Notes under the pieces: generated by a model
What the model was told of the DNA's origin: nothing
Database searches by the model: none
The model's input: only the letters and a program-made list of their open reading frames with translations
IMG/VR virus record: IMGVR_UViG_3300023184_000025
Span: 124,001 to 188,000 of that record
DNA: 64,000 nt
Reading direction: 5' to 3' (one strand)
Made by a program: the position numbers and the translations under genes
Shown: positions 27,925-49,314 of the stretch, one piece after another
Layout of the letters: each line of letters opens with the position of its first letter
Numbering within the stretch: position 1 is the first letter of the stretch

Positions 27925-27936
27925 ATCTTATATTTA

Positions 27937-29505
27937 TTACATCATTGTCATAACAAACGGCAGTGGTTCAATTACCACATCCTGGTGATCGCGCATTTGT
28001 TCGTCAAGATTCTGGTGATAACTCTGCAATAACTGCATCATTCTAACTACCAGTAAAGTTGACATTACCAGATCGTCTGTTTCTCCCATTTTTGCCGCAT
28101 AGCTTGCGCCTGACGCAACAAAGTTTTTAAGTTCACTGATCAGGCTTTTGCTGTTGATTTTCATACGCTTTGACTCAACCAGGTGTTTTAACTTGGCGCA
28201 AGCAGATAGCTTTGACTTGTTGGTTGTGTTAAATCCTTTACGGAATCTACGACTAACACTAACTCCGGGTTCGCTGAGGAAATAGCCTTGTATGTTTTCT
28301 TCTCCGTATTCAGCAATAGAAATTAGTGCGGCTTCCCCAATGGTGTTATTTTCCACTGAAAAATAGATACTTTTTGGGTCACGCACAGTTTCATTGATGT
28401 GTCGTATAATGTCGGCTAGTATTCTAACTTGGCCAGGAATGTCAGTTTTATTATGTCTCCATTCTCCAACTTGTAGTGTGGAGTTTGCATCAAATATCTG
28501 AATTGCTGCCGGGTCGCCGCCGGTGCCCAGACTAGGGTCAAGTGCAACAACATAAATTTTTTCAGGATCTATTCGACAATACCATCGTACTTCACCAGTT
28601 TTATAAGCTGGGTCTACACCTTCTAGATCAATCAATGTTGTTGGAGCAATCAGCGTTTCATCATTGATGATGAATTCGCAATCCATTTCACGTCGGAAAC
28701 GATCAGTGCCCAGGGCCGCACGTTGTTGTGTTGCCCAAGATTCATCACGGTCCGGATGCTCATTCCAAAAGCTACGATAGGCTTTGAAGCCATTGACACC
28801 AATTTCAGTAGGATTACCAAATTCATCTTCACAACGATTGGCGCCTTTCCATAACAGAGCAAACTGGTCTTCGTCACTGTTGGGAGTTGATGTAATAATT
28901 GCTTTACCACCAGTGGCTAGTGTGGGACTGATAGAAGTCCAAAATTCTGTGGCAATTGTAGGTCGGACAAATGCAAACTCGTCTGCGTACAGTAATGATA
29001 TACTCATACCACGACCGGTGTTTTCTGTGGTTGTTGCTGACACAATACGCGAGCCGTTGTCAAATTCTAAACTACCTTTGTTGTAACTTGTGACGCCAGC
29101 ACGAATATGATCAGGTACCGATTCATAGGCGTATCGTACCCGTTGCATGATCTCTTGTGCTCCTGTGTATTTGTGTGCGGCAACTAGTATAGTACTGTCA
29201 GGAATAAACATAGCATACCAAAGTAGATATCCGGCAGCTGATGTTGACTTACCTGTTTGTCGAGGCATCATTGAAATTGAATATCTATAATTATGGTAGG
29301 TATGAATTAGTCTACGTTGATATTCAAACGGATGATACAACATTCGACCACGAGTTGGGTGCTGTATATAGAAAAAATGGTCCATAAAATAAAGTGGACC
29401 ACTAGCAGGATCGGCACAGGCAATAAACTCATCAAGCTGTTGCTCGGTATAGTTAATACGTAAATGGGGTGGCTTAATTAAAACGCCTTCTAAAGACTTA
29501 CTCAT
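27937..29505 (-). CDS. gp17: Terminase large subunit
   Basis: PRQTGKST, GRGMS, Walker B ADEFAF, TSTPN, nuclease LDPSLG and DDLVM. Confidence 0.95.
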   Translation of the reverse strand: MSKSLEGVLIKPPHLRINYTEQQLDEFIACADPASGPLYFMDHFFYIQHPTRGRMLYHPFEYQRRLIHTYHNYRYSISMMPRQTGKSTSAAGYLLWYAMFIPDSTILVAAHKYTGAQEIMQRVRYAYESVPDHIRAGVTSYNKGSLEFDNGSRIVSATTTENTGRGMSISLLYADEFAFVRPTIATEFWTSISPTLATGGKAIITSTPNSDEDQFALLWKGANRCEDEFGNPTEIGVNGFKAYRSFWNEHPDRDESWATQQRAALGTDRFRREMDCEFIINDETLIAPTTLIDLEGVDPAYKTGEVRWYCRIDPEKIYVVALDPSLGTGGDPAAIQIFDANSTLQVGEWRHNKTDIPGQVRILADIIRHINETVRDPKSIYFSVENNTIGEAALISIAEYGEENIQGYFLSEPGVSVSRRFRKGFNTTNKSKLSACAKLKHLVESKRMKINSKSLISELKNFVASGASYAAKMGETDDLVMSTLLVVRMMQLLQSYHQNLDEQMRDHQDVVIEPLPFVMTMM

Positions 29506-29547
29506 ATCAATATATATGGTAAAACGGCAGTTAAGCCAGAGTTTTAA

Positions 29548-30360
29548 TTAATCAGCTTTGCCACACTTGGCACGTTTAGCGTTGGTCAATGTGCCAAAAT
29601 CTACAGCCCATTCGGTGTCAGGTGTAATTTCTTTTGCATTAGCAGGAAATTTAAACTGTACACCTGCTTGACTTTGAATAGTAGAAATCATTGCACGGAA
29701 TTGAGTTAGATCGTTACCCAGGTTAACATAAGGTTTTGTATGTGGGAATGCCCAGCCAGCTATTTCATGAGTGACATTGTTGATTACAATTTTATAGTAA
29801 GCATGTGGCACAATAACACCGTTACCAATTGTTTCATCGCCGGCGCCATATAACGCACCCACATAGATTGTGTATGCTTGATTGCGTTGTACTACCCATC
29901 CACGTACTGATGTTTCTAACAGTTTCCAAATTCCACGATTAAGTGACCCGTGTTGTGGATACATGTTGGTCATTAGGAATGATTCGTACTCAACTTGCTC
30001 GCTCCAGGATAAATCACCGTCGGGCGCGGCATGGCCTTTGTCGTAGCCTGTGCCAGCATAGTCATCTGGCTTGGCACCATTTGGTACTGAACGATCAGCA
30101 ACAAATGCATTTGTTCTTGGCCAGCATCCTAATGCATTAGGTGGTGTTAGGGTATAGGCAACATAAACAGGAATCTTGACTGGTGCATCATACGCAACGA
30201 AGTACGCTTCGCGACATATAGGTTGTGCTGGTCGCTTTGTTTTTGCAAAGCCGTATGGGCTGTGTATTTGACATGCTTGTGGGGGTAATGGAGCACGTTG
30301 TTCCCATGCTTGAGCTAGACTTGATGCCGCTAGCAATACGGCAAATAACAGTTTTTTCAT
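29548..30360 (-). CDS. DNA/RNA non-specific endonuclease (Serratia NucA family) with Sec signal peptide
   Basis: MKKLLFAVLLAASSLAQA signal; YDKGH, TNMYPQ, LNRGIWKLLE. Confidence 0.9.
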   Translation of the reverse strand: MKKLLFAVLLAASSLAQAWEQRAPLPPQACQIHSPYGFAKTKRPAQPICREAYFVAYDAPVKIPVYVAYTLTPPNALGCWPRTNAFVADRSVPNGAKPDDYAGTGYDKGHAAPDGDLSWSEQVEYESFLMTNMYPQHGSLNRGIWKLLETSVRGWVVQRNQAYTIYVGALYGAGDETIGNGVIVPHAYYKIVINNVTHEIAGWAFPHTKPYVNLGNDLTQFRAMISTIQSQAGVQFKFPANAKEITPDTEWAVDFGTLTNAKRAKCGKAD

Positions 30361-30381
30361 CTGGTATTTAGTTACCCAGAT

Positions 30382-30771
30382 TTAGCGTGGGTAACCTTTG
30401 AATGCGTTAATTGGACTTTTGTTATCAATAAATGGAGGTTCTTTGCTAGGACCAGTTGACACCATCTTTTTGCCGCCAGGAGTGTTGGTCATTTTAAGAG
30501 CAGAGTCAATTATCTGCGCAACGCTATTGTTCATTCCGACTACAATGCCGTGCTCACCAAATGTTGTTTCATCATGCCACTCGGGCATGTTAGGATTAAC
30601 CTCATCCTTAACAGCGTCACTTCTTGCACGAGCAATTGCTACACCAAATCTATAATTTTTATACGGGTCTGCGGCACTGAGGCCGGGAATCACATAGGTG
30701 TAGCGCATAGGGTCAGCTTGCTCAGCCGGCAACTGGGCGGATTGTTCAGTGATAAACTCGCGGGCTCTCAT
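30382..30771 (-). CDS. Putative internal head protein with capsid-targeting-like N-terminus
   Basis: MRAREFITEQ; ends SPINAFKGYPR; paralog of the adjacent gene. Confidence 0.7.
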   Translation of the reverse strand: MRAREFITEQSAQLPAEQADPMRYTYVIPGLSAADPYKNYRFGVAIARARSDAVKDEVNPNMPEWHDETTFGEHGIVVGMNNSVAQIIDSALKMTNTPGGKKMVSTGPSKEPPFIDNKSPINAFKGYPR

Positions 30772-31142
30772 CTTGGGTAGCCTTTGAATCCAGTAACAGG
30801 ACTGACTTTGTGTGTGTCGTTGGGTTCTTTACTAGAATGATCACGAATTAACTCATGTGCATCGGTTCCTGAAACTGTGTTAAATGCCTGTCTCATCATA
30901 TTATGTTCTGTTTCGGTATACGGATATGCCATATTATTCTTTCCAGCAAAACTTTCATCTTCCATGTCCAATGCTTTAGTACTTTTACCATCGGCCATAG
31001 CAGTTGCCTTCATTACCTGATTCAAGTGATATATTCTATCTGTACCATCATCCTTGAATTTATATGCGCCGCGAGAAACAGAGGCATGATCTTTATGCAT
31101 CTTGCCTTTTTTAGATTCAACAATAAATTCGTGTGCTCTCAT
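30768..31142 (-). CDS. Putative internal head protein with capsid-targeting-like N-terminus (start revised to 31142)
   Basis: MRAHEFIVES; TAATG-coupled; ends SPVTGFKGYPR. Confidence 0.7.
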   Translation of the reverse strand: MRAHEFIVESKKGKMHKDHASVSRGAYKFKDDGTDRIYHLNQVMKATAMADGKSTKALDMEDESFAGKNNMAYPYTETEHNMMRQAFNTVSGTDAHELIRDHSSKEPNDTHKVSPVTGFKGYPR

Positions 31143-31420
31143 TATGGTTGCCAAACGCCAACTTGCCCTGAGCTTGCAGTACCAACTTCTTGTATAGTAG
31201 CGTTAGATCCAGTGATTGTGAGTTGATTGCCAACTCCTACCCAAACAGTCACACGATTGTTTGCGGGAATCACAACAGGATTTGAATATAAATTACCAGT
31301 AGACGGACCGTATACTAAATTTACATTGTAGGTAACAGTATTTGTACCTGTGGATATTCTGGCTTTATCTGTGTACCATGTCTGGCTACTAGCAGATGTA
31401 TAAACGTTGGCTTGACTCAT
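31142..31420 (-). CDS. Small beta-rich virion-like hypothetical protein
   Basis: SD upstream; T/N/V/G-rich; coupled to the next gene. Confidence 0.7.
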   Translation of the reverse strand: MSQANVYTSASSQTWYTDKARISTGTNTVTYNVNLVYGPSTGNLYSNPVVIPANNRVTVWVGVGNQLTITGSNATIQEVGTASSGQVGVWQP

Positions 31421-31436
31421 GTTCTTATTTTCCTTT

Positions 31437-32498: not shown

Positions 32499-34681
32499 TT
32501 TCTAGAATAACGTTGATATAATTCCCACAGCCGGGCTTCCTGGCTTTCAGCCATTGGTCCAACTGATCCACGAGCTGGATCACGATTAAGAACCGGAGTA
32601 GTGGTTTGTCCTGTTGTCTTTGGTCCGTTTAAACCACCGCTGAGTGTTTTAGTCATTGTGTCAATGCCAGCATACTCTGTGTTGTCTGCGCTGTTAGCCA
32701 ACTCTTCGTCCACTTGTTCGCAACCACATTCTCTAGAACCGCAGGATGGGCAAACTTCCGAGTAACCTTCACTGCTACCGCCCATACCGGCCAACTTTAG
32801 AATCTGTGCTAGTTTTCCTGCATCTTCATCTGTGGCAGACACGTTAAGACTATTATGTCCTTCTGAATCAACAGTGGCATTGATATTCATGCTTTCGTTT
32901 AACACTTCAGTCATTCTAGCGTTGAAACTTTCAGCTAGTTTTGCTTCGTATACACCTTTACCGTACTGCATTCCGCTTTTGCTTGGAGTGCTGTCAGACG
33001 TTTCTTCAACTTCTTTTTTCTTGGCTTTCTTTTCAGGCAAGCCTTTGTGCTTGGTGGCAGCAAAGTCTTCAGCATCTTTCTTTTTCATAGTTTTGGCCAC
33101 TTTGCCAACTTCTTTGCTGGCTGGCTTCCCGCCTTTTTGTGCGGCATGAACCATGCCCATGAACTTTTGTTGCTTCTTGCTTGTTGCTTTTTCGTCAAGT
33201 TCTTTTTCATTGACCTGCGCATTACCTGGCTGATTGTTTTTAATCATGGTCATTGCGGCCCATAGTGAGCTTTCAAGACGACTAGCAAAGCCTGGTGGCA
33301 TTTGTCCTCCGCCCTGAGCTTTTTTGGCAATTGCACGTAGTTCAGCAAGTTCATTATAAATTTCTTGAGCCTGTCCTGAGTCAGAGCCTTCTTTGGTCAT
33401 TAACTTTGAAGTACCGCTTGGTCCTTTGGCACCAATACTCTTGCCTGTGCCTTTTGGACGACCTTTGCCGCGCTTGTCTCCTGCGGCTGGTGTATCATCT
33501 GTGCCCACGCTGTGGCCAGTATTGGGATCAACACGGCGTGTTACTTTTCGACCAGTTGCTGTGTGTTCAATATCATGCAATGCACCACGCTCGATAGAAC
33601 CAACTTTGGGTTTCTCTGGACGTGGCTTCTTCCATGATGTAAATGGATTGTTGTCATCTTCGTCAACTTCTCCTGGTGCACCTTTGATACCAGCGGCTTT
33701 GAGTGCGGCTGCTCTGTCTGGGTAGCCTTTAGTTCCGGGCTTGATGTCTTTGGATGCTTTTCCAATTGCGGCTTTTACCTTTGGCGAGGCATTGCTGGCA
33801 TTAACATGCTTCATTGTTGTTTTGGCCTGGTGACTTTTTGCACCCATTTTACCAATGGCACTTTTCATTGCTTCAGCAGCAACATCGCCCAACATTTCAT
33901 CAACTTCTTGTTTTGCGCCAGCAATTTTGTCAGCAAAAGTAATTTTGTCTTTGGGTTCGGCTAGTGCGGCAAATGATTTTTGCTTGGCAGTCATTGGAGA
34001 ACTACCTTCACCAAATTGCACATTGTCCCCTGCTGAGAATTGTGTGTTGGCCAAACGCTTTGGTAATCGACCTTTAGCAATGATAAAATCTAATTCCTGG
34101 TCTGTTGGGCCTGCTTGTTCTAGATCGTGAGCCAGGTCCTGCATTGCATCGTTGTCCCATATATCGTCGCCATACAATGCGGCAATTGAATCTAGTACTT
34201 TGTCAAAGTTAACTGCGCCTACAGCTTCACCAACGGGCTTTTTGCCTGTCTGTGGCAAGCCTGCTTTGCGTTGTAGGTCACGAATCATGTCTTCGTCGCT
34301 GCCATGGCCCAATGTGTCGAGGGCCTTCTGACCAACTTTCTTAACACCACTGCCAATTTTTTTAACTACATCGCCCATGTCTTCATCAAATGCATCGCCT
34401 ACTTTATCTCCGGCAATTGCGCCACCTACTGCTCCGAGTGGTCCCAGAGCCAGTGCACCTAGTCCAGCACCGATACCAGTTCCAATTATGCCTTCATCAA
34501 CTTCTTTAGCTTTACCGCCTTTGGCATCTTTGCCCAGTCGTCCAGCAATGACATCGCCACGTGTGACCTTGTCATAGGGCTTGGCATTGTTGGCCAAGTT
34601 GCCGTCGCCTTTGCCTTCTTTTAGTGTTTGTTTATCAGCCAGGTCACTCAGCTTTTTGTTTAAGTCGTAAAAAAATGTCAT
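32495..34681 (-). CDS. Putative prohead-core/internal head polyprotein (728 aa)
   Basis: Repeated LKEG, VDEG, VGEA, FGEG, VDEM, VDED, TKEG, LDEK, VEET, LAES, LNES, MAES; glycine zipper; AT-hook-like KGRPKG. Confidence 0.7.
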   Translation of the reverse strand: MTFFYDLNKKLSDLADKQTLKEGKGDGNLANNAKPYDKVTRGDVIAGRLGKDAKGGKAKEVDEGIIGTGIGAGLGALALGPLGAVGGAIAGDKVGDAFDEDMGDVVKKIGSGVKKVGQKALDTLGHGSDEDMIRDLQRKAGLPQTGKKPVGEAVGAVNFDKVLDSIAALYGDDIWDNDAMQDLAHDLEQAGPTDQELDFIIAKGRLPKRLANTQFSAGDNVQFGEGSSPMTAKQKSFAALAEPKDKITFADKIAGAKQEVDEMLGDVAAEAMKSAIGKMGAKSHQAKTTMKHVNASNASPKVKAAIGKASKDIKPGTKGYPDRAAALKAAGIKGAPGEVDEDDNNPFTSWKKPRPEKPKVGSIERGALHDIEHTATGRKVTRRVDPNTGHSVGTDDTPAAGDKRGKGRPKGTGKSIGAKGPSGTSKLMTKEGSDSGQAQEIYNELAELRAIAKKAQGGGQMPPGFASRLESSLWAAMTMIKNNQPGNAQVNEKELDEKATSKKQQKFMGMVHAAQKGGKPASKEVGKVAKTMKKKDAEDFAATKHKGLPEKKAKKKEVEETSDSTPSKSGMQYGKGVYEAKLAESFNARMTEVLNESMNINATVDSEGHNSLNVSATDEDAGKLAQILKLAGMGGSSEGYSEVCPSCGSRECGCEQVDEELANSADNTEYAGIDTMTKTLSGGLNGPKTTGQTTTPVLNRDPARGSVGPMAESQEARLWELYQRYSRK

Positions 34682-34691
34682 GTTGTTTTCC

Positions 34692-35291
34692 TTATTTCAT
34701 AAAGCCGGTTGCAGGCTTGGGTGGTCTTTTAATTGTTGTCAATGGGCTTTTGACTCCCATTGGCAGTTGATTTGTTGTCTGTGCAGGTGCAGTTTTGCCA
34801 CCAGCCACAGTCCATTTAGCATCAGCGGCAGAATTTTTAACAACTTCGTGCTCACTGGGTTCAGCGGCATAGTCAGCTTTTAATTTCTTTTGTTCAGCAT
34901 CTGTGGGTGGCAAATCTGTGGTTAGCAGATCCTTTTGATTTTCAATGCCCAATAACTCTTTGTCCATGCCTTCGGCCCAGTCACGTTGATCCATCACAAT
35001 GCTGTTTGCATCAAGACCCAGCAGTTCAGCAATCTGAACCACCTGTGGTGGTGTAGCCGGATATTTAAAACTAACATCAATGATGTTTACAGACTGATTA
35101 GCATGGTCTGGGAACCCAACTGGTTTAGATAAAATTGGGGTTTTCTTTGGCTCAGAGATTTTGATTGGGTCGAATTTTTTTAACTTTTCGTTAAAAGCTT
35201 TCATAAAACCACCTGGCAAATCACCAATGATTTTAATACGGTAATCAAAGGTTTGAGCACTTTCAATCAAGTATTGTGCAAATGTTTTCAT
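34692..35291 (-). CDS. Putative head protein with capsid-targeting-like N-terminus
   Basis: MKTFAQYLIES; TAAATA and AGGA SD upstream. Confidence 0.7.
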   Translation of the reverse strand: MKTFAQYLIESAQTFDYRIKIIGDLPGGFMKAFNEKLKKFDPIKISEPKKTPILSKPVGFPDHANQSVNIIDVSFKYPATPPQVVQIAELLGLDANSIVMDQRDWAEGMDKELLGIENQKDLLTTDLPPTDAEQKKLKADYAAEPSEHEVVKNSAADAKWTVAGGKTAPAQTTNQLPMGVKSPLTTIKRPPKPATGFMK

Positions 35292-35312
35292 ATTTAGGAT
35301 CCTATATTATAT

Positions 35313-35798
35313 TTATCGATCAGACGTCTTTGTGTTGGTTCGATCAACTAGTCTACTGAGTAATTCATTACGGTCAATAACAGCACCTTGACCAGTTGGC
35401 ATGTTGTTATTGTTAACATCATCTTTATCTAGTTTTGCTTTCTTTAACTGTAGATCAATCATCTTTAGCTTTTTATTCATCTTGGCAGTTTTTGCTGTGA
35501 TAGCATGGCCTAGCATCTGGCTGGCAACACTGAAAATTTCGCTAGCAAAACGGCTGTCTACTTGCATGCCCAGGTCCATAAGATTGTCAAATTCTTTAGT
35601 GGCCTTGGCAGCCAGTTCGTCCATTTCCTGATCACTGGCTTCTAGCCCTCGAACCGCAGGTAATGCTGCCTCAATCTTATCTAAGGCATCTAGGGTTTCT
35701 GGTAGTACTGGGAAAGTGGGCTGTGACTCAGGTGTCACAACAGTATCTTCAGAGTCTGAAGATGGAAGATCAAATAAAGATTCAAGTTTACGAGTCAT
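35313..35798 (-). CDS. gp16: Probable terminase small subunit (gp16-like)
   Basis: Size, helical hairpin plus coiled coil and GAVIDRNELL tail resemble gp16; TAAATA 4 nt before ATG. Confidence 0.55.
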   Translation of the reverse strand: MTRKLESLFDLPSSDSEDTVVTPESQPTFPVLPETLDALDKIEAALPAVRGLEASDQEMDELAAKATKEFDNLMDLGMQVDSRFASEIFSVASQMLGHAITAKTAKMNKKLKMIDLQLKKAKLDKDDVNNNNMPTGQGAVIDRNELLSRLVDRTNTKTSDR

Positions 35799-35813
35799 GC
35801 GGTATTTACCGCA

Positions 35814-36245
35814 TTATTTGTTGCCGTTCTGGAATATGTCGTCTTCGGTAATTACTCTAAAAACCAGGCCCTGGCGCTGACACCATTTTTGAGCACTATC
35901 CCATTTGGCATAATTTACAGCAACCACAGCACGATCACGTTCACTCATTTTGCCTTCTATTACACTTTGCTTTTTGGGTTTGATTTCAATTACTTCAGCA
36001 AAGGTTTTGTTATTTTTTGTTCTGTATGTGACTAAAAAGTCTGGGATGTAATTAGAAATTTTACCGGTTAGTGGATGACGATAAGGAATAACAATAGACT
36101 CGCTGGCCCATTGAAGTATATTGTCGTTGCTGTCGCAAAATCGCATAAATGCTAATTCCCAGCCACTGCGATAACGAGGGCTACTATTGCCTACATACTT
36201 TTGTGTGTTTTCTACTTTATAAACACCTTGTGCAAACTTGCTCAT
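35814..36245 (-). CDS. gp4: Head completion nuclease (T4 gp4; TnsA-N-like)
   Basis: YRSGWE..FM..CD, WASE...IPY, YIPDF, IEIKP, NYAKW. Confidence 0.9.
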   Translation of the reverse strand: MSKFAQGVYKVENTQKYVGNSSPRYRSGWELAFMRFCDSNDNILQWASESIVIPYRHPLTGKISNYIPDFLVTYRTKNNKTFAEVIEIKPKKQSVIEGKMSERDRAVVAVNYAKWDSAQKWCQRQGLVFRVITEDDIFQNGNK

Positions 36246-36604
36246 ATCAATACATTACGGGCGGCATAGTAATTAGGAACAACCGATGAGTTAATTCCCA
36301 GTAGCGTTGCTGGACTACGCATGCCATTTAGGTAGTAGGCCAGTGTGCTGTTCAGTTGTAGTTGATCTTGGTCACTGATTGCAGCCAAGATTGTCATTAC
36401 TGATGTTTGTGTTTTGCTAGCAATTCTAAACAACGTAGTTGTAAAGTTTTGAGCTGCTACTTTGTCTTTCATTGCCTGAAAGAAAAAACTATAAACACTA
36501 TCGTATTCGTTGGTATCTACTTCTTCAGAGTAGTTGTAAAAAGTGTCAAAAATCCGTACAGTTAGATCAATCTTGGGATTGATTTCATTGATAGAACGTG
36601 CCAT
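36242..36604 (-). CDS. Hypothetical structural-module protein (120 aa)
   Basis: Packed between the tube-like gene and gp4 (ATGA overlap). Confidence 0.75.
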   Translation of the reverse strand: MARSINEINPKIDLTVRIFDTFYNYSEEVDTNEYDSVYSFFFQAMKDKVAAQNFTTTLFRIASKTQTSVMTILAAISDQDQLQLNSTLAYYLNGMRSPATLLGINSSVVPNYYAARNVLI

Positions 36605-36606
36605 TT

Positions 36607-37746: not shown

Positions 37747-37753
37747 GTGCTAA

Positions 37754-38371
37754 TTAACCGCTGACTACGTTGTTTACAGTACGTGCAACAGTGGCACCAA
37801 CACCAGAACCAAGTGGAGTCTGGAGAGCGTTGTCGAAACGAATCTGCATTGTAATAGTTACAGCTTCACTTGATGAATAGTTCAAGTCATTGTAGTTAAC
37901 GTTGGACAAGTAGCAACCATACAATTCCCAAGTTTCAAGAACCACTGGAGTATATGCGCCATTACCGCCGTCTAGAATTTCACACTTGGTAGTGAACTTG
38001 TAGTCAATACCTGAAGCGGCACTGGCCTGCTCATAGAAGTCCAATTGCTTTTGTAGTTGTTCACCAACTAAACGAGCAACTTGACCGCTGGCGTCATCAC
38101 GTAGGTTAACAGTGACCTGCTCCCAACTGTGTTTACCAGCAACATATAACTTGCTGTTATAGATGTCAATTGGAATTTCTTCAAATGTTACCGACGGGCG
38201 AGTAAAGTCAATCACTTGCTTGGTCAATTCAGTACGCGGTGTCATGATACCGAAGTTTTCGAATATCGCACGAAAGCGATATTTAAGTTTTGGCATTAAC
38301 AAACCTTGGTTGGGATTACTTTGATCACTTGCCAAAGGAACTGTCATTCTGCTAATAGATGCTACGGCCAT
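37754..38371 (-). CDS. gp19: Tail tube protein
   Basis: KYRFR, RPSVTFE, AGKHSWE, WELYGCY, QIRFDNA; downstream of the sheath gene. Confidence 0.88.
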   Translation of the reverse strand: MAVASISRMTVPLASDQSNPNQGLLMPKLKYRFRAIFENFGIMTPRTELTKQVIDFTRPSVTFEEIPIDIYNSKLYVAGKHSWEQVTVNLRDDASGQVARLVGEQLQKQLDFYEQASAASGIDYKFTTKCEILDGGNGAYTPVVLETWELYGCYLSNVNYNDLNYSSSEAVTITMQIRFDNALQTPLGSGVGATVARTVNNVVSG

Positions 38372-38393
38372 ATTAAAATCTCCTATATGTAAT

Positions 38394-38399
38394 TATTTA
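38394..38399 (-). promoter_or_regulatory. Late promoter TAAATA for tail tube
   Basis: CATAAATA followed by AGGAG SD. Confidence 0.7.
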
Positions 38400-38414
38400 T
38401 GGCAAGTGATGACT

Positions 38415-38442
38415 AAAAAAATGGGGCATAAGCCCCATTTTT
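38415..38442 (-). terminator. Terminator after the sheath gene
   Basis: AAAAATGGGGC/GCCCCATTTTT stem with 4-nt loop. Confidence 0.85.
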
Positions 38443-38471
38443 CTGCATTGTAATGCCATATAACCAGCCTA

Positions 38472-41400: not shown

Positions 41401-41852
41401 GCATTCCATTGTAGGATACCCCAAATGCTTGAAGTTGTATCCAACCAGTATGTGCCATTGGCTGGCGCACCAGTTGGGCGAACCAAGCTGGCAGTTAATT
41501 CAGACAAGTCAACGTCAGCACGTTGAACATAAGCACGATTACTGATACCCAACACCGAGTGCGCGGCAAGTAAGCCATACTCGTTGAGCTCGTAGCCGTT
41601 GATCGGTGTGCCGGCTGTGGTTTTGTAGAAGAACGGATTGCCAAACGTTGCGGCAAGATCTCGCTGGCTGGTGATTAAATACACTTTGCCTGCGTTAACT
41701 TTTAATGTTCCAGCGGCAACACCAGTTCCTGTTCCGGAAACTTTATTCTGCGCAGTGGCAAGAAGGATATACGGTACCGAATTTGTCGCGGAAGGTATAT
41801 AATTAGACTCGTCAATAACTGTGACTTGTACGCCTGGGGATACTAGTGCCAT
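38472..41852 (-). CDS. gp18: Contractile tail sheath protein, enlarged (1126 aa)
   Basis: MALVSPGVQVTVIDES, FGNP, PWLAPAGVRRG, INPI, RINVARL, FEPND, AVEFIYI. Confidence 0.95.
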   Translation of the reverse strand: MALVSPGVQVTVIDESNYIPSATNSVPYILLATAQNKVSGTGTGVAAGTLKVNAGKVYLITSQRDLAATFGNPFFYKTTAGTPINGYELNEYGLLAAHSVLGISNRAYVQRADVDLSELTASLVRPTGAPANGTYWLDTTSSIWGILQWNATTGAFSSQTPMVITDTADLTSGVPKASIGSIGDYAVVATNNKNPVYYKSTDNAWYLVGSMDWQQQWPTIQGTNSVTFQMTATQTIIINGVAVSTRSSPNATLANLVTDINAAAIPGVVASANSSSRLILAANSDAESDGSSADGGIINIDPDSSDVMLSELGIQDGIYYAPVLQQSPNYTVPRWRSTDTQPRPTGSVWNMVTAVNAGASIIVKEYSTVLASFVTKTAPIYQDDAAANKGLDPSGGGKNITAGSLYVQYNVAPELPNNNNTFTLEIFERMSTGATTITGDTTTPTFTTSSQFTISASAPNSSTMSTPVEVTISGTTSAAFVAAVSSANVPYVSANINSDGSISMVHSRGGVIELLSTTNDPVGDAGINTTVTGVRYSNADDITSALVLSSWVALDYTASANAPSQDPANGRNWYYSSATQVDIMIQDGNGWAGYRTVDNDVRGYDLTVTDPNGPIISASQPTTQTDGTSLVYGDLWIDTADLENYPLIYRYEEIDGADTWVAINNTDQTSQNGVLFADARWAPNGTTDPVSDAYPTIISLLTSNYLDLDAPEADLYPAGMLLFNTRRSGYNVKQFSVDYFNAQDFSVDPYSSQTAYLVGNKTLYNGVIYVCVANSTGNVPTDSDYWALLETNAWVTVSGNKSDGSPYMGRKAQREIIVAALKSAIDTQDTLREEQQQFNLIACPQYPELMINMVALNNERNNTAFVIGDTPLRLGPSGNSLVDWATNQGGLGIGGEDGITTSDPYLGVFYPQCQTTDLSGGQVVQPSSHMMLRTIVRSDEVAFPWLAPAGVRRGIVDNAERIGYINSLTGEFVTIATGQSVRDILYEHKINPITFIPGVGITNYGNKTESAMTSAMDRINVARLVAFIRGRLMEIGKQFVFEPNDQITRNEISNAIDGLMIDLVAKRGIYDYLVVCDESNNTPARIDRNELYVDIAIEPVKAVEFIYIPVRIQNTGTISGGGAAAA

Positions 41853-41880
41853 AATTTCATCCTTTTAAAATGGTTATCAA

Positions 41881-41946
41881 TATTTAGCAATTGTGGCAAA
41901 ACTCAGCCGGTAACCGGTGCCTTAATTAAGGTTCGCCATATAAATA
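41881..41946. promoter_or_regulatory. Divergent late promoters (TAAATA minus 41886-41881; TATAAATA plus 41939-41946)
   Basis: Sheath gene has an AAGGA SD leader; the HNH ATG is 5 nt after TATAAATA. Confidence 0.7.
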
Positions 41947-41951
41947 CCTGT

Positions 41952-42296
41952 ATGAGACCATTATGTGAAGTATGTAAAAAGAACTTTTCTGCTGTGAACG
42001 GTTACCACAATAACAAGATTTATTATCGTAAACGATGTAATGCTTGTATACGCAAAAAGAAAAAACTTAAATCGCAGACCCCAAGATGGCAGTTAAATGG
42101 TTACAAGAAAAAAGCCGCATGTGATCGTTGCGGCTTTAAAGCTAGACATCCAAGTCAGTTGCTAGTGTATCACGTTGATGGTAATTTAAACAGCACCGAG
42201 CTAAGAAATTTAAAAACTATTTGTCTTAATTGCATTGCCGAAATTAACCGGCTCGATCTTCCGTGGAAACCAGGAGACCTGCCACCAGATCATTGA
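41952..42296 (+). CDS. Small Zn-binding HNH-like endonuclease
   Basis: CxxC pairs (CEVC, CNAC, CDRC, CLNC) and VYHVDGN...NL. Confidence 0.75.
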   Translation: MRPLCEVCKKNFSAVNGYHNNKIYYRKRCNACIRKKKKLKSQTPRWQLNGYKKKAACDRCGFKARHPSQLLVYHVDGNLNSTELRNLKTICLNCIAEINRLDLPWKPGDLPPDH

Positions 42297-42904: not shown

Positions 42905-43603
42905 TTAAAATTTAGGTAATTGGATAGAAATCTCATCTGCCCAGGAGTTCATTCCGTCATGTGTCAAATGCATGTTATCGGCGGCAATCAGATTGTTTTT
43001 AATTCCATATTCAAAAGGAGTAATATCAATGTATTTGTCCCAATTTAAGAAATCCAGATATCCACCAGATTTAGGTATAGCGGATCCCAATGCTGGTGCC
43101 CAATCAAAATCGTTGCTAAAGATATTGTATACAAAACTAAACCTATAGTCAATGCCCTGTGATTCTAAAAATGAGTGGCAAGCTACAATTTTTTGTGTTG
43201 ATTGTTCTACTAGAAACTTTTCATTGTTACTTGAATATTGTAATTTAAAAAACTTTTCGACGTCTGGATGATAAGACGGGGTAATTTTACCTTTATACTT
43301 AAAAAAATTCCCGCCGGAAAAGACTGCAATCCCATCGTTAGTTGGACCGTGTAAATCTTCTTTAAATACCAGATCTTTAGTTTCCTTCGGAAAGTATGCT
43401 TCTCTTCGACGAACTCCTGTCCATAAAATAAAAACAAAATCTGGCTTGCCATTTAATCGAATCTCATCAAATATACTAAAACTTATAAAGTCGTTGCCCG
43501 CGGCACCACGTGCTTTATTTGTGACTGAGCATCCTTGAAATAGATGTTCTGGCCAGGATTGCCTGACTGTGTAACTACAGCCCGATACTAAAACTTTTTT
43601 CAT
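42905..43603 (-). CDS. SGNH/GDSL-like hydrolase or acyltransferase; start revised to 43603
   Basis: VSGCSYT, GAAGN, terminal MHLTHDG; TAACTA 5 nt before ATG 43603. Confidence 0.7.
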   Translation of the reverse strand: MKKVLVSGCSYTVRQSWPEHLFQGCSVTNKARGAAGNDFISFSIFDEIRLNGKPDFVFILWTGVRRREAYFPKETKDLVFKEDLHGPTNDGIAVFSGGNFFKYKGKITPSYHPDVEKFFKLQYSSNNEKFLVEQSTQKIVACHSFLESQGIDYRFSFVYNIFSNDFDWAPALGSAIPKSGGYLDFLNWDKYIDITPFEYGIKNNLIAADNMHLTHDGMNSWADEISIQLPKF

Positions 43604-43634
43604 ACTAATAGTTATTGTTGTAATATGCTGGGCA

Positions 43635-44156: not shown

Positions 44157-44172
44157 TTAATCACCTATTTAA

Positions 44173-44832
44173 TTAAGTTATCATTTGTAAAATTTTATCC
44201 GTTAATAATCTGTGGCTGTGCCTGTTAGGATGTGCCCCGTCTGGATAAAAGTATTCAGGGTAATTTTTGTATTCTTTAAATTTAGTTTCTCCATTAAGAA
44301 GAATTTGTAAGTACTGTTCTTTTTGTTTAACATTACCAATCACCGGCAAGCTAATCAACTGTTTCCATCCCGGACTGACTGAATGCTTACTCTCCTTAAA
44401 TTCTGGAACTAACAACTTAGAAAAGCTAGGAATAACATAATTAAGATTTGATGTATTGCACTCTTCAAGTGACGAATACCCCCCAATTAGAATCACTTTA
44501 AGTCGAAATGATTGTTGTATTTCAAATAATTGTGCAAGAGATTCATTACTTAATTTCTCTATTAAATCAAACGGCATTTTGCTATTCAATTCTTGTTTGG
44601 TTGCATCTCTTAAGGGGTCGGTGAAAAAGAATACTAAAAAATCGTAACTATCTGTAGCTGACTTTATAAAATGTTGAATTCTGGTTATAGCCGTTTGGTT
44701 ACTGGCTCCACCTAGTCCCACGTTTATCACCACATGATTTAATTCTTCAAGGTATTGCTGGACGCCAGAATGTATAGGGTATGGATCCCATTCACCTTGG
44801 CTCCAGCTGTCGCCCCCGATTAAAAATTTCAT
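44173..44832 (-). CDS. SGNH/GDSL-like hydrolase or acyltransferase
   Basis: GGDSWSQG, GGASN, DGAHPN..SH. Confidence 0.75.
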   Translation of the reverse strand: MKFLIGGDSWSQGEWDPYPIHSGVQQYLEELNHVVINVGLGGASNQTAITRIQHFIKSATDSYDFLVFFFTDPLRDATKQELNSKMPFDLIEKLSNESLAQLFEIQQSFRLKVILIGGYSSLEECNTSNLNYVIPSFSKLLVPEFKESKHSVSPGWKQLISLPVIGNVKQKEQYLQILLNGETKFKEYKNYPEYFYPDGAHPNRHSHRLLTDKILQMIT

Positions 44833-44834
44833 GT

Positions 44835-45278
44835 TTACCTATTTAGAATTGAATAGTATTGAAGGAAAACGTTTGGCTCTGACAGATCTAACAATATTTC
44901 ACCATTAAAACCAATGTAGCTTGTGGTCCATGTTTGTCCATCTGTTGTATTGATAGTTAATCCTTGATGGATAAATTTTTCATTTAGATTAAACCCATCA
45001 AGATTAACTCCGAGTATTTTAACATATAAATCTTGTGTAATTTTTCCATCCTGATCAAAAATCACATCAGTATTGTGGTCTTTGCCACTGAAACGTAACT
45101 TTACCACTGCTGGTAGATCTAAATAAATTTTTGGTTTAGACAGATACTGCCCGTCAACTAATTCTGGCTGGACCTGGGTTACGTTATCACCCGAAGACAA
45201 TACAACAGTCATGAGTTTATCATTGACACAACCAAATTCAAACTCAATTTCAATATAGCAATGGTTAAGTTTTTTCAT
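44835..45278 (-). CDS. Hypothetical beta-rich protein coupled to the radical SAM gene
   Basis: Overlaps the radical SAM stop; no family recognised. Confidence 0.7.
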   Translation of the reverse strand: MKKLNHCYIEIEFEFGCVNDKLMTVVLSSGDNVTQVQPELVDGQYLSKPKIYLDLPAVVKLRFSGKDHNTDVIFDQDGKITQDLYVKILGVNLDGFNLNEKFIHQGLTINTTDGQTWTTSYIGFNGEILLDLSEPNVFLQYYSILNR

Positions 45279-46782: not shown

Positions 46783-46808
46783 CTGTTATATTTTCAAATT
46801 GATATCTA

Positions 46809-47573
46809 TTAACCAATGACCAATGTCAGCGGCTGTGATCCATCTACATAGAGTTTTAGATCTTCTATGCATCTATCCATCTGAGTTTGTGCTTCGCTCT
46901 TCATTGCTGATCCATTTAGGGTGCCACCACCTTGAGGTCCAGCAATGGTGCCAAACTTTTCACGTGCTTCACCAATGATCATTTTAGAAGCGGCAACCAT
47001 GTAATCACGTATCCATTGACTAATTTGAAAGTCGCTTAACAAAGTAATTTCAGGTTTGAGATTGTAGGTCCATAACAACACTACTTCGCCAGTGCCTTTT
47101 GGGTCACGTATTAGCTGTAGTTTTTTTGTAACAGGATTCCAGGTAAAGTTGATATAGCCACCAAACATACGTGCGGCCAGTTCCACATACTGTTGATAAA
47201 AGTCGTAGGTTGCAAGTCCGCCTTGCTGTTGATTAAAGTTTAATAGATAAGTGTTTAATGTTGCGGCGCCAAACGGGTCAAAACTTGTGCCACCGCCTCC
47301 GGTGCTGAGGCCAATTGTGCGTCTGAAAATTTGTCTGACTTGTGTAACTTCTTGTGGCAACGTGTATTCATTTACATCGTTAAGTAATTCCATAAAGCTG
47401 TAGCTTTCTTCATAGGCATTTTGCGCACGTTGGCGATAAGTGCCTATAGTTTTCTGATAAGCGGCTTCGAAGTGTGCTGGGTCTAGCTCAATGTCAATTA
47501 TTTGACTGGCTAGTTGTAACTGCACATATTCTATCAGTTGTTTCTTCAGCGGGTCTAGTGTTTGATCTGCCAT
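46809..47573 (-). CDS. gp13: Neck protein (T4 gp13-like)
   Basis: LQL..QIIDIEL, YTLP, WIRDY..A..KMIIG..R.KF, LNG..MKSEA; TAAATA plus AAGGAG SD. Confidence 0.85.
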   Translation of the reverse strand: MADQTLDPLKKQLIEYVQLQLASQIIDIELDPAHFEAAYQKTIGTYRQRAQNAYEESYSFMELLNDVNEYTLPQEVTQVRQIFRRTIGLSTGGGGTSFDPFGAATLNTYLLNFNQQQGGLATYDFYQQYVELAARMFGGYINFTWNPVTKKLQLIRDPKGTGEVVLLWTYNLKPEITLLSDFQISQWIRDYMVAASKMIIGEAREKFGTIAGPQGGGTLNGSAMKSEAQTQMDRCIEDLKLYVDGSQPLTLVIG

Positions 47574-47594
47574 GTAGGGCTCCTTGCCCTATAT

Positions 47595-48740
47595 TTAGCG
47601 CACCTTCAACAGTATCAAGTTCTCATTGCCACGTCCGTTAAACTTGGTATCTGTTGCCTTGATGTCCTTGAATACCTTACGAGCCTGTGGTGCTCCTACT
47701 GACAGCAACGCTTTGATCTGTTCAGCAGGCTTACGTAGGGTTTTTTGCACACTGGTAGCGGCGTCAAACCCAATGATAGAACTGCTTTTTACAGTAAGAG
47801 AGCCAATGTGACTGTCTGCTGTGACATGGATCAACTTGCGTTTTTTGGTGTCGTACAACCAGGCTTCTGTGGCACCCACCAGGCCCGTGACAGGCACTGA
47901 CTTGAGTTTGAGTTCTGCAAACTCTTTGAGATACTTGAATTTGGCTGTGAGTTTGGCAGGATCAATGGGTTTTGACTTGCGTGGCTTGCGCTCGACCTTT
48001 TTAATTTGCACATAGGCACCACAGTCGTTGATCACTGTCTCGCAGAACTTGATCATATTACGAATGTCAATTTTGCTATAGCAACTGTACGCTTCAACCA
48101 ATTGTGAGTCTTTGCCTTTGGCAACTTCCTCAAATTCTTCTAGTCGTTTTTTCCAAATGTCAGAAATGGTACTGATCATTTGTGGCGCTACATTCATGCC
48201 GCGTATTGTGGCAATAGGTTTGACATTGGCTGACATTTTGGCACCCTCGGTAACAAAGTCATCAAACAGGCCTTCGATTTCGCCAGCACACTCGGATACC
48301 TTTTCACGCAATCGGTCCTGAATGGTTATTTTGGCCGCCGATGCATCCTCAGCCACTACTTCTTCTTTCATTTCTTCTTTGATCTCTAGTAATTCTTTAA
48401 TGAGATTATCTAATTTAATTTGTTCATGTTCGTTTAACTCAAGCCCCATGTCACTCATGCGGCACAACCAGCCTGTGGTCAGACGAATTTGACTGTCGCT
48501 GAGACTGCGAATCTGTTTGGCATCTCGGGTACGCTCATGACGATCCAAATAGGATGCAATCATGTCCTTGGCATCTTTTTTGCCGTAAAAGTAATTGTAC
48601 CATCCAAATGCCTTGCTCAATGCACTGATGCGATAGTCAGATGGTTGGTGTGCCCAAATGGGTTCCATGCCCATGGCATTGGTATCTGCACTACGTGGGT
48701 TCAGTGGCTTGGGTGGTTTAATTTTAGTTTGGGTAATCAT
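47595..48740 (-). CDS. Hypothetical protein (381 aa) in the early island
   Basis: Long ORF with AAGGA SD; no family recognised. Confidence 0.85.
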   Translation of the reverse strand: MITQTKIKPPKPLNPRSADTNAMGMEPIWAHQPSDYRISALSKAFGWYNYFYGKKDAKDMIASYLDRHERTRDAKQIRSLSDSQIRLTTGWLCRMSDMGLELNEHEQIKLDNLIKELLEIKEEMKEEVVAEDASAAKITIQDRLREKVSECAGEIEGLFDDFVTEGAKMSANVKPIATIRGMNVAPQMISTISDIWKKRLEEFEEVAKGKDSQLVEAYSCYSKIDIRNMIKFCETVINDCGAYVQIKKVERKPRKSKPIDPAKLTAKFKYLKEFAELKLKSVPVTGLVGATEAWLYDTKKRKLIHVTADSHIGSLTVKSSSIIGFDAATSVQKTLRKPAEQIKALLSVGAPQARKVFKDIKATDTKFNGRGNENLILLKVR

Positions 48741-48748
48741 GTTAGTCC

Positions 48749-49036: not shown

Positions 49037-49063
49037 ATACACTCCTTTGTTGTACAAGTGTAT

Positions 49064-49092
49064 ATTATAGCAGACTCAGATTATGTAGTCAA
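49064..49092 (-). promoter_or_regulatory. Early sigma70 promoter TTGACT-N17-TATAAT (TGn)
   Basis: -35 at 49092-49087, -10 at 49069-49064. Confidence 0.8.
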
Positions 49093-49188
49093 CGGCGTTG
49101 TTGTTTTGGGAGGTGTGGGCCGTTTGGGTGCGGTGTCACAGGATTCGATTCCTTTAAAATGCCATTTTCTGCAATGTGTACATTCCAT
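49081..49188 (-). CDS. 35-aa Cys/His microprotein (not in ORF track)
   Basis: MECTHCRKWHFKGIESCDTAPKRPTPPKTTTPLTT*; AAAGG SD and consensus promoter directly upstream. Confidence 0.6.
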   Translation of the reverse strand: MECTHCRKWHFKGIESCDTAPKRPTPPKTTTPLTT

Positions 49189-49215
49189 TTGTTTAAACCT
49201 TTTAGTTGAGTTGTA

Positions 49216-49244
49216 ATTATAACATTATATTGATTAACTGTCAA
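49216..49244 (-). promoter_or_regulatory. Early sigma70 promoter TTGACA-N17-TATAAT (TGn)
   Basis: -35 at 49244-49239, -10 at 49221-49216. Confidence 0.85.
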
Positions 49245-49301
49245 CTGCTAGTTGTTGTTTTTAGAACACACTAGCTTTAAACTAAACTACAATGCCACCC
49301 A

Positions 49302-49307
49302 TAAATA
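49302..49307 (+). promoter_or_regulatory. Late promoter TAAATA, 7 nt before the gp14 ATG
   Basis: CATAAATA-GTACACT-ATG, no SD. Confidence 0.7.
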
Positions 49308-49314
49308 GTACACT

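What the first reader, a model, noticed from the sequence alone, without database searches (positions are those of the whole stretch)
27925..49314. Two-tier late translation: many leaderless mRNAs versus SD-led structural genes
Seen (examples span the whole window): TAAATA-to-ATG spacers of 4 nt (10723, 11312, 30360, 35798), 5 nt (11350, 41952; TAACTA 43603; TATATA 29505), 6 nt (27924) and 7 nt (17429, 44832, 49315), all without SD. In contrast, sheath, tube, gp13, the 8555 gene and the 54689 and 61234 fibre genes have TAAATA plus an SD leader. Known: T4 late transcripts start a few nt after TATAAATA and carry SD leaders. Inference: low-copy late proteins are translated leaderless and high-copy ones SD-led. 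This also points to a host competent in leaderless initiation.
Basis: partly seen in the sequence, partly recalled or inferred. Interest (0 to 1): 0.7.

Follow-up and report, generated by a model that had tools for sequence, protein, structure and literature searches.

The report
Promoters fused to start codons
In this uncultured 345-kb freshwater jumbo phage and its many relatives, about 30 genes have the T4-type late promoter core TAAATA only 4-7 bases before their ATG and no ribosome-binding site, which implies mRNAs with no leader, a layout absent from T4, PA5oct and Atu_ph07.

Summary
All 12 listed sites check out. Genome-wide, TAAATA is the commonest hexamer 4-7 nt before called starts (29 genes; shuffles average 2.6, maximum 10). 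It is also the commonest hexamer 15-28 nt upstream (31 genes, nearly all with an SD). Only 5 copies fall at 8-14 nt.

In 80 related contigs the layout is conserved gene by gene while flanks diverge:
- 820-aa gene: 52 of 53 distinct upstreams have TAAATA at 4-7 nt.
- w35798: 27 of 27 at 4-5 nt.
- Tube gene and w35291: always TAAATA plus SD.

The genome encodes a gp55-type late sigma. A 5-nt spacer puts the T4-type start site on the A of ATG. The base before ATG is a pyrimidine in 83% of these genes, against 48% in the other called genes.

T4, PA5oct and Atu_ph07 have 0-2 such genes. A host-type TTGACw-N16-18-TAnnnT promoter is likewise fused to the ATG of w3343 in 50 of 61 orthologues, so the layout is not confined to late genes.

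No start-site data exist, so leaderless transcripts remain an inference (about 0.7). The low-copy versus high-copy split is only a trend. This is a new variant of a known kind.

The parts
27922..27936 (-). TAAATA (27931-27936), 6-nt spacer, ATG of an 820-aa virion protein; no SD
   Evidence: In orthologues, 53 of 53 distinct upstreams keep exact TAAATA, 52 of them at spacer 4-7.
29503..29516 (-). TATATA variant (29511-29516), 5-nt spacer, ATG of the large terminase
   Evidence: In orthologues, 22 of 57 distinct upstreams have exact TAAATA at 4-7 and 19 have a one-mismatch variant.
30358..30370 (-). TAAATA (30365-30370), 4-nt spacer, ATG of a nuclease
   Evidence: Some orthologues instead carry TAAATA plus an SD leader, so this gene switches class.
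35796..35814 (-). TAAATA (35803-35808), 4-nt spacer, ATG of a 161-aa protein. The motif sits in a 7-bp hairpin that also pairs the A and U of the start codon.
   Evidence: 27 of 27 orthologues at spacer 4-5; -9.8 kcal/mol, z = -3.5.
41941..41954 (+). TAAATA, 5-nt spacer, ATG of an HNH endonuclease
43601..43614 (-). TAACTA variant, 5-nt spacer, ATG (internal ATG of a longer frame); unverified
   Evidence: One-mismatch variants are not enriched.
44830..44845 (-). TAAATA, 7-nt spacer, ATG of a 219-aa protein
49302..49317 (+). TAAATA, 7-nt spacer, ATG of a 438-aa virion structural protein, at a divergent junction
10721..10733 (-). TAAATA, 4-nt spacer, ATG. The TAA of the motif is also the stop codon of the upstream gene.
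11310..11352 (.). Back-to-back divergent pair. TAAATA+4+ATG reads leftward (start 11312) and TAAATA+5+ATG reads rightward (start 11350). Only 37 nt separate the two ATGs.
   Evidence: There is no room for any leader or other promoter.
17427..17442 (-). TAAATA, 7-nt spacer, ATG of a methyltransferase, in an 18-nt divergent gap
35289..35315 (-). SD-led class: TAAATA (35310-35315), 18-nt leader region with AGGA, ATG
   Evidence: Orthologues: 24 of 24 at spacer 17-19 with an SD.
38369..38399 (-). SD-led class: TAAATA, 22 nt containing AGGAG, ATG of the tail tube gene
   Evidence: Orthologues: 12 of 12 at spacer 20-23 with an SD.
41850..41886 (-). SD-led class: TAAATA, 28 nt containing an SD, ATG of the tail sheath gene
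47571..47597 (-). SD-led class: TAAATA, 18 nt containing AAGGAG, ATG of the head-tail adaptor (gp13-like)
3341..3378 (-). Host-type promoter fused to a start codon: TTGACT, 16 nt, TATAAT, 7 nt, ATG of a 166-aa protein; no SD
   Evidence: Orthologues: 50 of 61 distinct upstreams have -35 / N16-18 / TAnnnT / N5-8 / ATG; 43 of those 50 have a 6-nt spacer; 0 of 61 have an SD.

Best explanation
TAAATA is the -10-type core of this phage's late promoters and is read by host RNA polymerase carrying the phage's gp55-like sigma factor.

In one set of genes the motif lies 15-30 nt or more before the ATG, and the transcript carries a normal leader with a Shine-Dalgarno sequence. In a second set (about 30 genes with an exact motif, 8% of my calls) it lies 4-7 nt before the ATG. 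Transcription there should begin on the A of the ATG or 1-3 nt before it, giving an mRNA with no ribosome-binding site. Such an mRNA must be started by the leaderless route, in which a ribosome recognises a 5'-terminal AUG.

The same architecture is used with host-type -35/-10 promoters for a few other genes. Leaders of intermediate length are avoided, presumably because they serve neither route.

Shown: the motif, its two spacing classes, the empty zone between them, the absence of an SD, the sigma gene, and conservation across a large clade.
Inferred: the transcription start position, the translation route, and the idea that leaderless genes are the modestly expressed ones.
For: 1. Same element in both classes. 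TAAATA is the top hexamer at 4-7 nt (29 genes) and at 15-28 nt (31 genes). Both classes share C at -3 and G/C at -2 before the motif, which other genomic copies lack. The motif is depleted in coding DNA.
2. Machinery. A gp55 homologue is present: 37% identity to T4 gp55, and phrog_12791 'sigma factor for late transcription' at 5e-75. Rak2-like relatives are already predicted to use ATAAATA with a gp55-like sigma (PMC5259590).
3. Geometry. T4's TATAAATA occupies -13 to -6 (PMC2988020). A 5-nt spacer therefore puts +1 on the A of ATG. Observed spacers are 4 (7 genes), 5 (10), 6 (5) and 7 (7).
4. Spacing classes. Spacer counts are 29 at 4-7, 5 at 8-14 and 31 at 15-28; p = 3e-16 against a uniform spread.
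5. Start-site signature. The base before ATG is a pyrimidine in 83% of short-spacer genes, against 48% in the other called genes (p = 3e-4). This fits the usual pyrimidine(-1)/purine(+1) start-site preference.
6. Conservation over relatives whose large terminase is 75-100% identical. The 820-aa gene has 52 of 53 distinct upstreams at 4-7 nt, and only 1 of 53 has an SD. w35798 has 27 of 27 at 4-5 nt. The SD-led genes stay SD-led (24 of 24 and 12 of 12). Across 1.1 Mb of relatives, 192 sites fall at 4-7 nt against 8 at 8-14 nt.
7. Divergent junctions. Nine of the 29 short-spacer genes sit at divergent junctions, some only 18-37 nt wide, where read-through from upstream is impossible.
8. Start codons. 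Downstream alternative starts with an SD are no commoner than in controls (3 of 29).
9. Independent parallel. The w3343 orthologues carry TTGACw-N16-18-TAnnnT-N6-ATG in 50 of 61 distinct upstreams, none has an SD, and 92% have a pyrimidine at -1.
10. Clade specificity. The same pipeline finds 0, 2 and 1 short-spacer genes in T4, PA5oct and Atu_ph07.
Against: No transcription start site was measured. The only RNA data set holds a 90-95% relative as short assembled contigs and gives no 5' ends.

Spacers of 6-7 nt may give 1-3 nt leaders rather than none.

No gp33 or gp45 homologue was found by BLAST, so T4 geometry is assumed rather than shown for this sigma factor.

My gene calls are crude: 381 genes, with the longest frame taken as the start.

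Twenty of the 29 short-spacer genes have a same-strand upstream neighbour, 13 of them within 45 nt. Read-through transcripts therefore also carry these genes.

The motif occupies the same window as an SD, so an RNA-level role cannot be fully excluded.
Confidence: 0.72

Rival explanations
1. TAAATA at 4-7 nt is a real late promoter, but it serves only the genes downstream. The adjacent gene is translated from longer read-through transcripts by coupling or SD-independent internal initiation. Closeness to the ATG merely reflects genome compaction.
For: Twenty of 29 short-spacer genes have a same-strand upstream neighbour, at a median gap of 21 nt. At 10723 the TAA of the motif is the upstream gene's stop codon.
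Against: Compaction predicts promoters at any offset, including 8-14 nt and inside upstream genes. The observed counts are 29 against 5 and 192 against 8 in relatives. The spacing is held to within about 1 nt per gene over deep divergence. Nine cases sit at divergent junctions with no upstream transcript. The pyrimidine bias at -1 is unexplained.
Confidence: 0.12
2. In the short-spacer class TAAATA acts in the RNA as an SD substitute, for example an A/U-rich enhancer or a site for a phage-modified ribosome, rather than as a promoter.
For: It occupies the same 4-7 nt window as SD hexamers. The phage encodes its own IF1.
Against: An exact hexamer is kept in 52 of 53 and 27 of 27 orthologous upstreams, more than an A/U-rich site would need. 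The same hexamer with the same flanking bias sits upstream of true SDs in the other class. The w3343 family shows a complete -35/-10 promoter in the same position. No bS21, IF3 or S1 gene was found.
Confidence: 0.08
3. Chance, or wrong start codons: the true starts lie elsewhere and the pattern is an artefact of A/T-rich intergenic DNA.
For: My gene caller is simple, and one-mismatch variants are at background level.
Against: Shuffles give 2.6 against 29 observed. tblastn alignments of orthologues reach residue 1 at the same ATG. Alternative downstream starts are not enriched. The same pipeline finds 0-2 cases in three other phages.
Confidence: 0.03

Closest known systems
Phage T4 late promoters (TATAAATA read by gp55, with gp33 and the gp45 clamp)
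   Same: A gp55-family sigma is present. An A/T-rich -10-type box has no -35 element. The box lies before structural genes. The SD-led class looks like T4: TAAATA is also the top hexamer 15-28 nt before T4 starts.
   Different: Only the 6-bp core is conserved (12 full TATAAATA copies in the genome). No gp33 or gp45 is detectable. T4 has no genes with the box 4-7 nt before the ATG, whereas this genome has 29.
Predicted ATAAATA late promoter of Rak2-like jumbo phages (CBB, GAP32)
   Same: The same motif, a gp55-like sigma and no gp33 or gp45 are reported for these relatives (PMC5259590). The sheath protein is about 40% identical.
   Different: No promoter-ATG fusion is described for them. CBB has only 9 raw TAAATA-N4-7-ATG matches, fewer than its control count.
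Thermus phage phiYS40 middle and late leaderless mRNAs, and the Deinococcus-Thermus '-10 region adjacent to ORF' pattern
   Same: A -10-type element lies a few bases before the start codon, there is no SD, and many genes are affected. The phage case is described as altering the IF2/IF3 balance (PMC3594737; PMC12340547).
   Different: Those systems use the host primary sigma in a phylum where leaderless mRNAs are the norm. Here the element is a phage-sigma promoter in a T4-superfamily jumbo phage whose host clues are betaproteobacterial, and roughly half of my called genes have a clear SD (193 of 381).
Lambda cI mRNA from PRM (classic leaderless mRNA in a proteobacterium)
   Same: Transcription starts on the A of AUG from a promoter directly upstream (my own knowledge).
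   Different: That is a single regulatory gene rather than a conserved class of about 30 genes.
T4 genes e, soc and I-TevI: a hairpin masks the start site in early read-through RNA, and late transcripts start inside the hairpin
   Same: At w35798 a 7-bp hairpin (-9.8 kcal/mol) encloses TAAATA and pairs the A and U of the start codon. A transcript starting at the ATG would lack it. The T4 cases are from my own knowledge.
   Different: In T4 the late transcripts still carry an SD. Here nothing would remain upstream of the AUG. The hairpin is specific to this gene and is not general.

Membership tests
T4-type (gp55-dependent) late transcription | Phage-encoded gp55-family sigma factor | tested here: met
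   T4 gp55 hits a 316-aa frame at genome 215572-216522 (E = 2.9e-6, 37% identity). PHROG 'sigma factor for late transcription' scores 5.4e-75.
T4-type (gp55-dependent) late transcription | TATAAATA-like box before late and structural genes, with no -35 element | tested here: met
   The TAAATA core precedes sheath, tube, portal, terminase and baseplate genes. No conserved upstream element is seen beyond a C/G bias at -3 and -2. The two 5' bases of the T4 octamer are not conserved.
T4-type (gp55-dependent) late transcription | gp33 co-activator and gp45 sliding-clamp activator | tested here: inconclusive
   There are no BLAST hits to T4 gp33 or gp45. A gp44 clamp-loader homologue exists. Both proteins are small and fast-evolving, and CBB also lacks detectable homologues.
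T4-type (gp55-dependent) late transcription | Transcription starts about 6 nt after the box | not testable with these tools
   There are no read-level RNA data for this phage.
Leaderless mRNA | Primary 5' end at, or within a few nt of, the start codon | not testable with these tools
   This is inferred from promoter geometry only.
Leaderless mRNA | No Shine-Dalgarno sequence before the start codon | tested here: met
   26 of 29 short-spacer genes have no SD-like 4-mer. Among orthologues, 1 of 53, 1 of 27 and 0 of 61 have one.
Leaderless mRNA | AUG (not GUG or UUG) as the 5'-terminal start codon | tested here: met
   28 of 29 use ATG. This does not discriminate, because 97% of all called genes use ATG.
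Leaderless mRNA | -10 element at a fixed short distance from the start codon, conserved in orthologues | tested here: met

The most novel reading that the evidence does not exclude
A whole freshwater clade of T4-superfamily jumbo phages may have made leaderless initiation a regular, conserved second channel of gene expression. It would cover about a tenth of their genes and run from both host-type and phage-sigma promoters welded to the AUG. The probable host is a betaproteobacterium, where such mRNAs are not known to be common. Leader length would be under disruptive selection (none, or long enough for an SD), and a phage-encoded IF1 might tune ribosomes towards or away from this channel.
Probability: 0.5. 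Interest if true: 0.72.

Novelty: new variant of a known kind. Interest (0 to 1): 0.6.

Why it matters
Leaderless translation is usually treated as a curiosity in proteobacteria and their phages. Here it appears as a conserved, gene-specific design feature in a large environmental phage clade.

It offers a natural set of matched promoters, the same sigma and the same box, with or without a leader. That set could be used to ask how leader choice sets protein output.

It also matters for annotation. Start codons and promoters in these genomes can be predicted jointly, and gene callers that weight a ribosome-binding site may mis-start these genes.

If the phage IF1 is linked, it would give a function to translation-factor genes seen in huge phages.

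Tried and rejected
RNA evidence. One search for RNA runs found a single metatranscriptome. It holds a 90-95% relative as 150-420 nt assembled pieces, with no usable 5' ends.

Near-identical phages. megablast against cultured phages found none.

bS21 idea. Relatives of the terminase sit in three Bacteroidota MAGs. I therefore tested whether the phage carries ribosomal protein bS21 to unlock SD use. No bS21 was found, and the 72-aa short-spacer frame next to the portal has no Pfam match.

Bacteroidota host. The evidence is against it. TTGAC-N18-19-TAnAAT lies 36 of 45 times in non-coding DNA. The Bacteroidota TTTG...TAnnTTTG pattern is barely enriched there (3 of 21 copies, against 9% of the genome). 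SDs are strong. The phage tmRNA is of the betaproteobacterial two-piece type.

One-mismatch motif variants. They are not enriched, so I did not count them.

Inverted repeat flanking TAAATA. It is not general and is specific to w35798.

Flawed control. A reversed-motif control overlaps ATAAATA and should be ignored.

Unrelated lineage. The 'moraphage' paper describes a different lineage.

IF3 and S1. No homologue of either was found.


Full report
WHAT THE WINDOW IS

The window is bases 124001-188000 of a single 345,154-bp contig with 40.3% G+C. The contig is an IMG/VR virus record rated 99% complete. Near-identical DNA occurs in lake and freshwater metagenomes.

It is a jumbo myovirus of the wider T4 superfamily:
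- The sheath protein is about 40% identical to those of Atu_ph07, Phosso and PA5oct, and matches the Rak2-like phages over about half its length.
- The window holds terminase, tube, sheath, adaptor and fibre genes.
- Blastp against T4 proteins identifies DNA polymerase, portal, protease, the major capsid protein, the clamp loader and others.

CHECKING THE OBSERVATION

The SD-led examples are also correct. For the 61234 gene the box lies 61 nt upstream.

I called 381 genes with a self-trained coding model, taking the longest frame as the start. The results genome-wide:
- 68 genes have TAAATA within 40 nt upstream on the sense strand. The spacer distribution has two humps: 4-7 nt (29 genes) and about 15-28 nt (31 genes), with only 5 at 8-14 nt.
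- The departure from a uniform spread has p = 3e-16. Shuffling each upstream region gives on average 2.6 genes at 4-7 nt, and at most 10.
- TAAATA is the single commonest hexamer in the 4-7 nt window, ahead of every SD hexamer, and also the commonest at 15-28 nt.
- Genome-wide it is the rarest of its 15 same-composition permutations, and 41% of copies lie in the 9% of non-coding DNA. That pattern fits a signal selected against where it is not wanted.
- Genes of the long-spacer class almost all show AGGA or GGAG 6-9 nt before the ATG. The short-spacer class has no room for one and shows none.

IS TAAATA A PROMOTER?

Several results say it is:
- The genome encodes a clear homologue of the T4 late sigma factor gp55.
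- The Rak2-like relatives CBB and GAP32 have been predicted to use ATAAATA with a gp55-like sigma, and they lack detectable gp33 and gp45 (PMC5259590). The same holds here.
- Both spacing classes share the same weak context before the box (C at -3, G or C at -2, little T at -1). The 153 other genomic copies do not.
- 31% of short-spacer genes and 32% of long-spacer genes sit at divergent junctions, against 7% of other genes. That is expected for first genes of transcription units.

WHERE WOULD TRANSCRIPTION START?

In T4 the octamer TATAAATA occupies -13 to -6 (PMC2988020). TAAATA therefore ends at -6, and a 5-nt spacer puts +1 on the A of ATG. The observed spacers are 4, 5, 6 and 7 nt, in 7, 10, 5 and 7 genes.

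The base just before the ATG is a pyrimidine in 24 of 29 short-spacer genes, against 48% in the other called genes (p = 3e-4). This matches the general preference of bacterial polymerase to start at a purine preceded by a pyrimidine (my own knowledge).

The near-empty 8-14 nt zone is what one expects if a leader must be either absent or long enough to hold an SD.

Several divergent junctions leave no alternative:
- The ATGs at 11312 and 11350 are 37 nt apart, with two back-to-back boxes between them.
- Gaps of 18 and 26 nt occur at window 17429 and at genome 90556.
- At genome 62484/62547 a 62-nt gap holds a host-type promoter fused to one ATG and a TAAATA fused to the other.

COMPARATIVE EVIDENCE

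The large terminase finds hundreds of relatives in IMG/VR. I fetched 80 loci at 75-100% protein identity, with 10 kb of flanks.

| Gene | Distinct upstream sequences | Result |
|---|---|---|
| 820-aa gene (w27924) | 53 | All have exact TAAATA; 52 at 4-7 nt; 1 has an SD-like word |
| w35798 | 27 | All at 4-5 nt |
| Large terminase | 57 | 22 exact at 4-7 nt; 19 one-mismatch variants |
| w35291 (SD-led) | 24 | All at 17-19 nt with an SD |
| Tube gene (SD-led) | 12 | All at 20-23 nt with an SD |
| Two control genes | 45 and 38 | SDs and no box |

The nuclease w30360 changes class between relatives. Across the 1.1 Mb of related DNA, a frame-based count gives 192 boxes at 4-7 nt before a first ATG, against 8 at 8-14 nt. 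The sequence around the box diverges freely, so the spacing itself is under selection.

SPECIFICITY

The identical pipeline on T4, PA5oct and 320 kb of Atu_ph07 again finds TAAATA among the top hexamers 15-28 nt before starts (first in T4 and PA5oct, sixth in Atu_ph07). It finds only 0, 2 and 1 genes at 4-7 nt. Published start-site maps of other jumbo phages report no leaderless transcripts: phiKZ (PMC8244752), and AR9 with leaders of 26-491 nt (PMC5312081).

NOT ONLY LATE GENES

Canonical TTGAC-N18-19-TAnAAT promoters are concentrated in non-coding DNA (36 of 45). In seven genes the -10 hexamer lies 5-7 nt before the ATG.

For w3343 I fetched 80 orthologous loci. Of 61 distinct upstream sequences:
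- 50 have TTGnnn, 16-18 nt, TAnnnT, 5-8 nt, ATG;
- 43 of those 50 have a spacer of exactly 6 nt;
- none has an SD;
- 92% have a pyrimidine at -1.

This is the textbook geometry for a start on the A of ATG with a primary sigma. It shows that promoter-ATG fusion is a general habit of this clade. It also argues that the host ribosome can start on such mRNAs, though when w3343 is expressed during infection is unknown.

THE TWO-TIER IDEA

Functions of the short-spacer class: portal, large terminase (variant box), a gp25-like wedge protein, the 820-aa virion protein, other virion proteins, two radical-SAM enzymes, two metallophosphoesterases, methyltransferases, nucleases and homing endonucleases. 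None is a known abundant protein.

The SD-led class has sheath, tube, adaptor, fibre- and spike-like proteins and a head-decoration-like protein. It also has the late sigma itself, PhoH, endolysin, a gp6-like wedge protein and a 1162-aa lysin or tape-measure-like protein.

The major capsid gene has a strong SD and no box within 50 nt. It lies downstream of an SD-led late promoter together with the protease gene and two unassigned genes (271 aa and 362 aa).

So abundant proteins are SD-led and no abundant protein is in the short-spacer class. The converse does not hold.

HOST

- Strong SDs and canonical -35/-10 boxes argue for a host with ordinary sigma-70 and anti-SD use.
- The phage carries 28 tRNAs and a tmRNA whose tag is ANDEQFALAA. 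The tmRNA matches the Rfam betaproteobacterial two-piece model over its full length (120 bits).
- A conflicting hint: more distant terminase relatives (57-73% identity) lie in three Bacteroidota MAGs.
- I found no bS21, IF3 or S1 gene. There is a clear IF1 gene, 82 aa and 72 bits to Pfam PF01176. Whether it bears on leaderless initiation is unknown.

WHAT IS KNOWN ALREADY

- Leaderless mRNAs from a -10 box next to the reading frame are established in Deinococcus-Thermus (PMC12340547).
- They are described for the middle and late genes of Thermus phage phiYS40 (PMC3594737).
- Lambda cI is the classic proteobacterial case (my own knowledge).
- A full-text search for 'leaderless' together with 'gp55' found nothing relevant.

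I therefore rate this a new variant of a known kind: the T4-type late promoter joined directly to the start codon as a conserved class.

LIMITS

- No start site was measured.
- The gene calls are crude.
- Spacers of 6-7 nt may give 1-3 nt leaders rather than none.
- One-mismatch boxes cannot be told from chance.
- Most short-spacer genes are also reachable by read-through transcripts, on which they would lack any SD.

At w35798 such read-through RNA would fold a 7-bp hairpin that pairs the start codon, with compensatory changes in orthologues. This recalls the T4 lysozyme and soc arrangement (my own knowledge) and fits a start inside the hairpin.

Noticed in passing
window 3341-3378 (minus strand); orthologues L152-L231: A canonical host-type promoter (TTGACT, 16 nt, TATAAT) lies 7 nt before the ATG of a 166-aa gene of unknown function, with no SD. 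The fusion is conserved in 50 of 61 distinct orthologous upstreams, mostly with a 6-nt spacer.
   Followed up: yes
window 35796-35814 (minus strand): A 7-bp hairpin (AUGCGGU / ACCGCAU, -9.8 kcal/mol, z = -3.5) encloses the TAAATA box and pairs the A and U of the start codon. Orthologues show compensatory arm changes (GCGG/CCGC, GCGA/TCGC, CCAA/TTGG, GGCG/CGCC). It is not a general feature of the other short-spacer promoters.
   Followed up: partly
genome 193560-193562 (minus strand), outside the window; L138:4360-4362: The major capsid gene (a T4 gp23 homologue) is interrupted by one in-frame TAA, with homology continuing in the same frame for about 100 codons. TAA is the commonest stop codon here, so recoding is unlikely. 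It may be an assembly or population variant, or read-through.
   Followed up: no
L150:1495-1743 (minus strand), genome 41717-41965: The phage encodes an initiation factor IF1 homologue (82 aa, Pfam PF01176, 72 bits). It lies directly upstream of a short-spacer gene (start 41708) whose product looks like a superoxide dismutase by eye.
   Followed up: partly
L143:12725-13069 (minus strand), and genome 293608-307992: A phage-borne two-piece tmRNA of the betaproteobacterial type (Rfam RF01850, 120 bits; tag ANDEQFALAA) and 28 tRNA genes. This is a host clue.
   Followed up: partly
L147, L148, L149: Terminase relatives at 57-73% identity lie on contigs binned into three Bacteroidota MAGs (Lishizhenia, Haliscomenobacter, Chitinophagales). 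This conflicts with the promoter, SD and tmRNA evidence for this phage's host.
   Followed up: no
genome 62485-62546, outside the window (L130): A 62-nt divergent gap holds a host-type promoter fused to one ATG (TTGACT-N17-TATAAT-N6-ATG, leftward) and a TAAATA-N7-ATG rightward. No leader is possible on either side.
   Followed up: partly
window 30358-30370; orthologues in L003-L082: The nuclease gene is of the short-spacer type here. Several relatives carry TAAATA plus an SD leader instead, so genes can switch between the two classes.
   Followed up: partly
window 34600-38500 in RNA run X24: A metatranscriptome labelled marine holds transcripts of a 90-95% identical relative of this freshwater phage. 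Depth drops to zero in the bins that hold several gene junctions, but the divergence of intergenic DNA could explain that.
   Followed up: no
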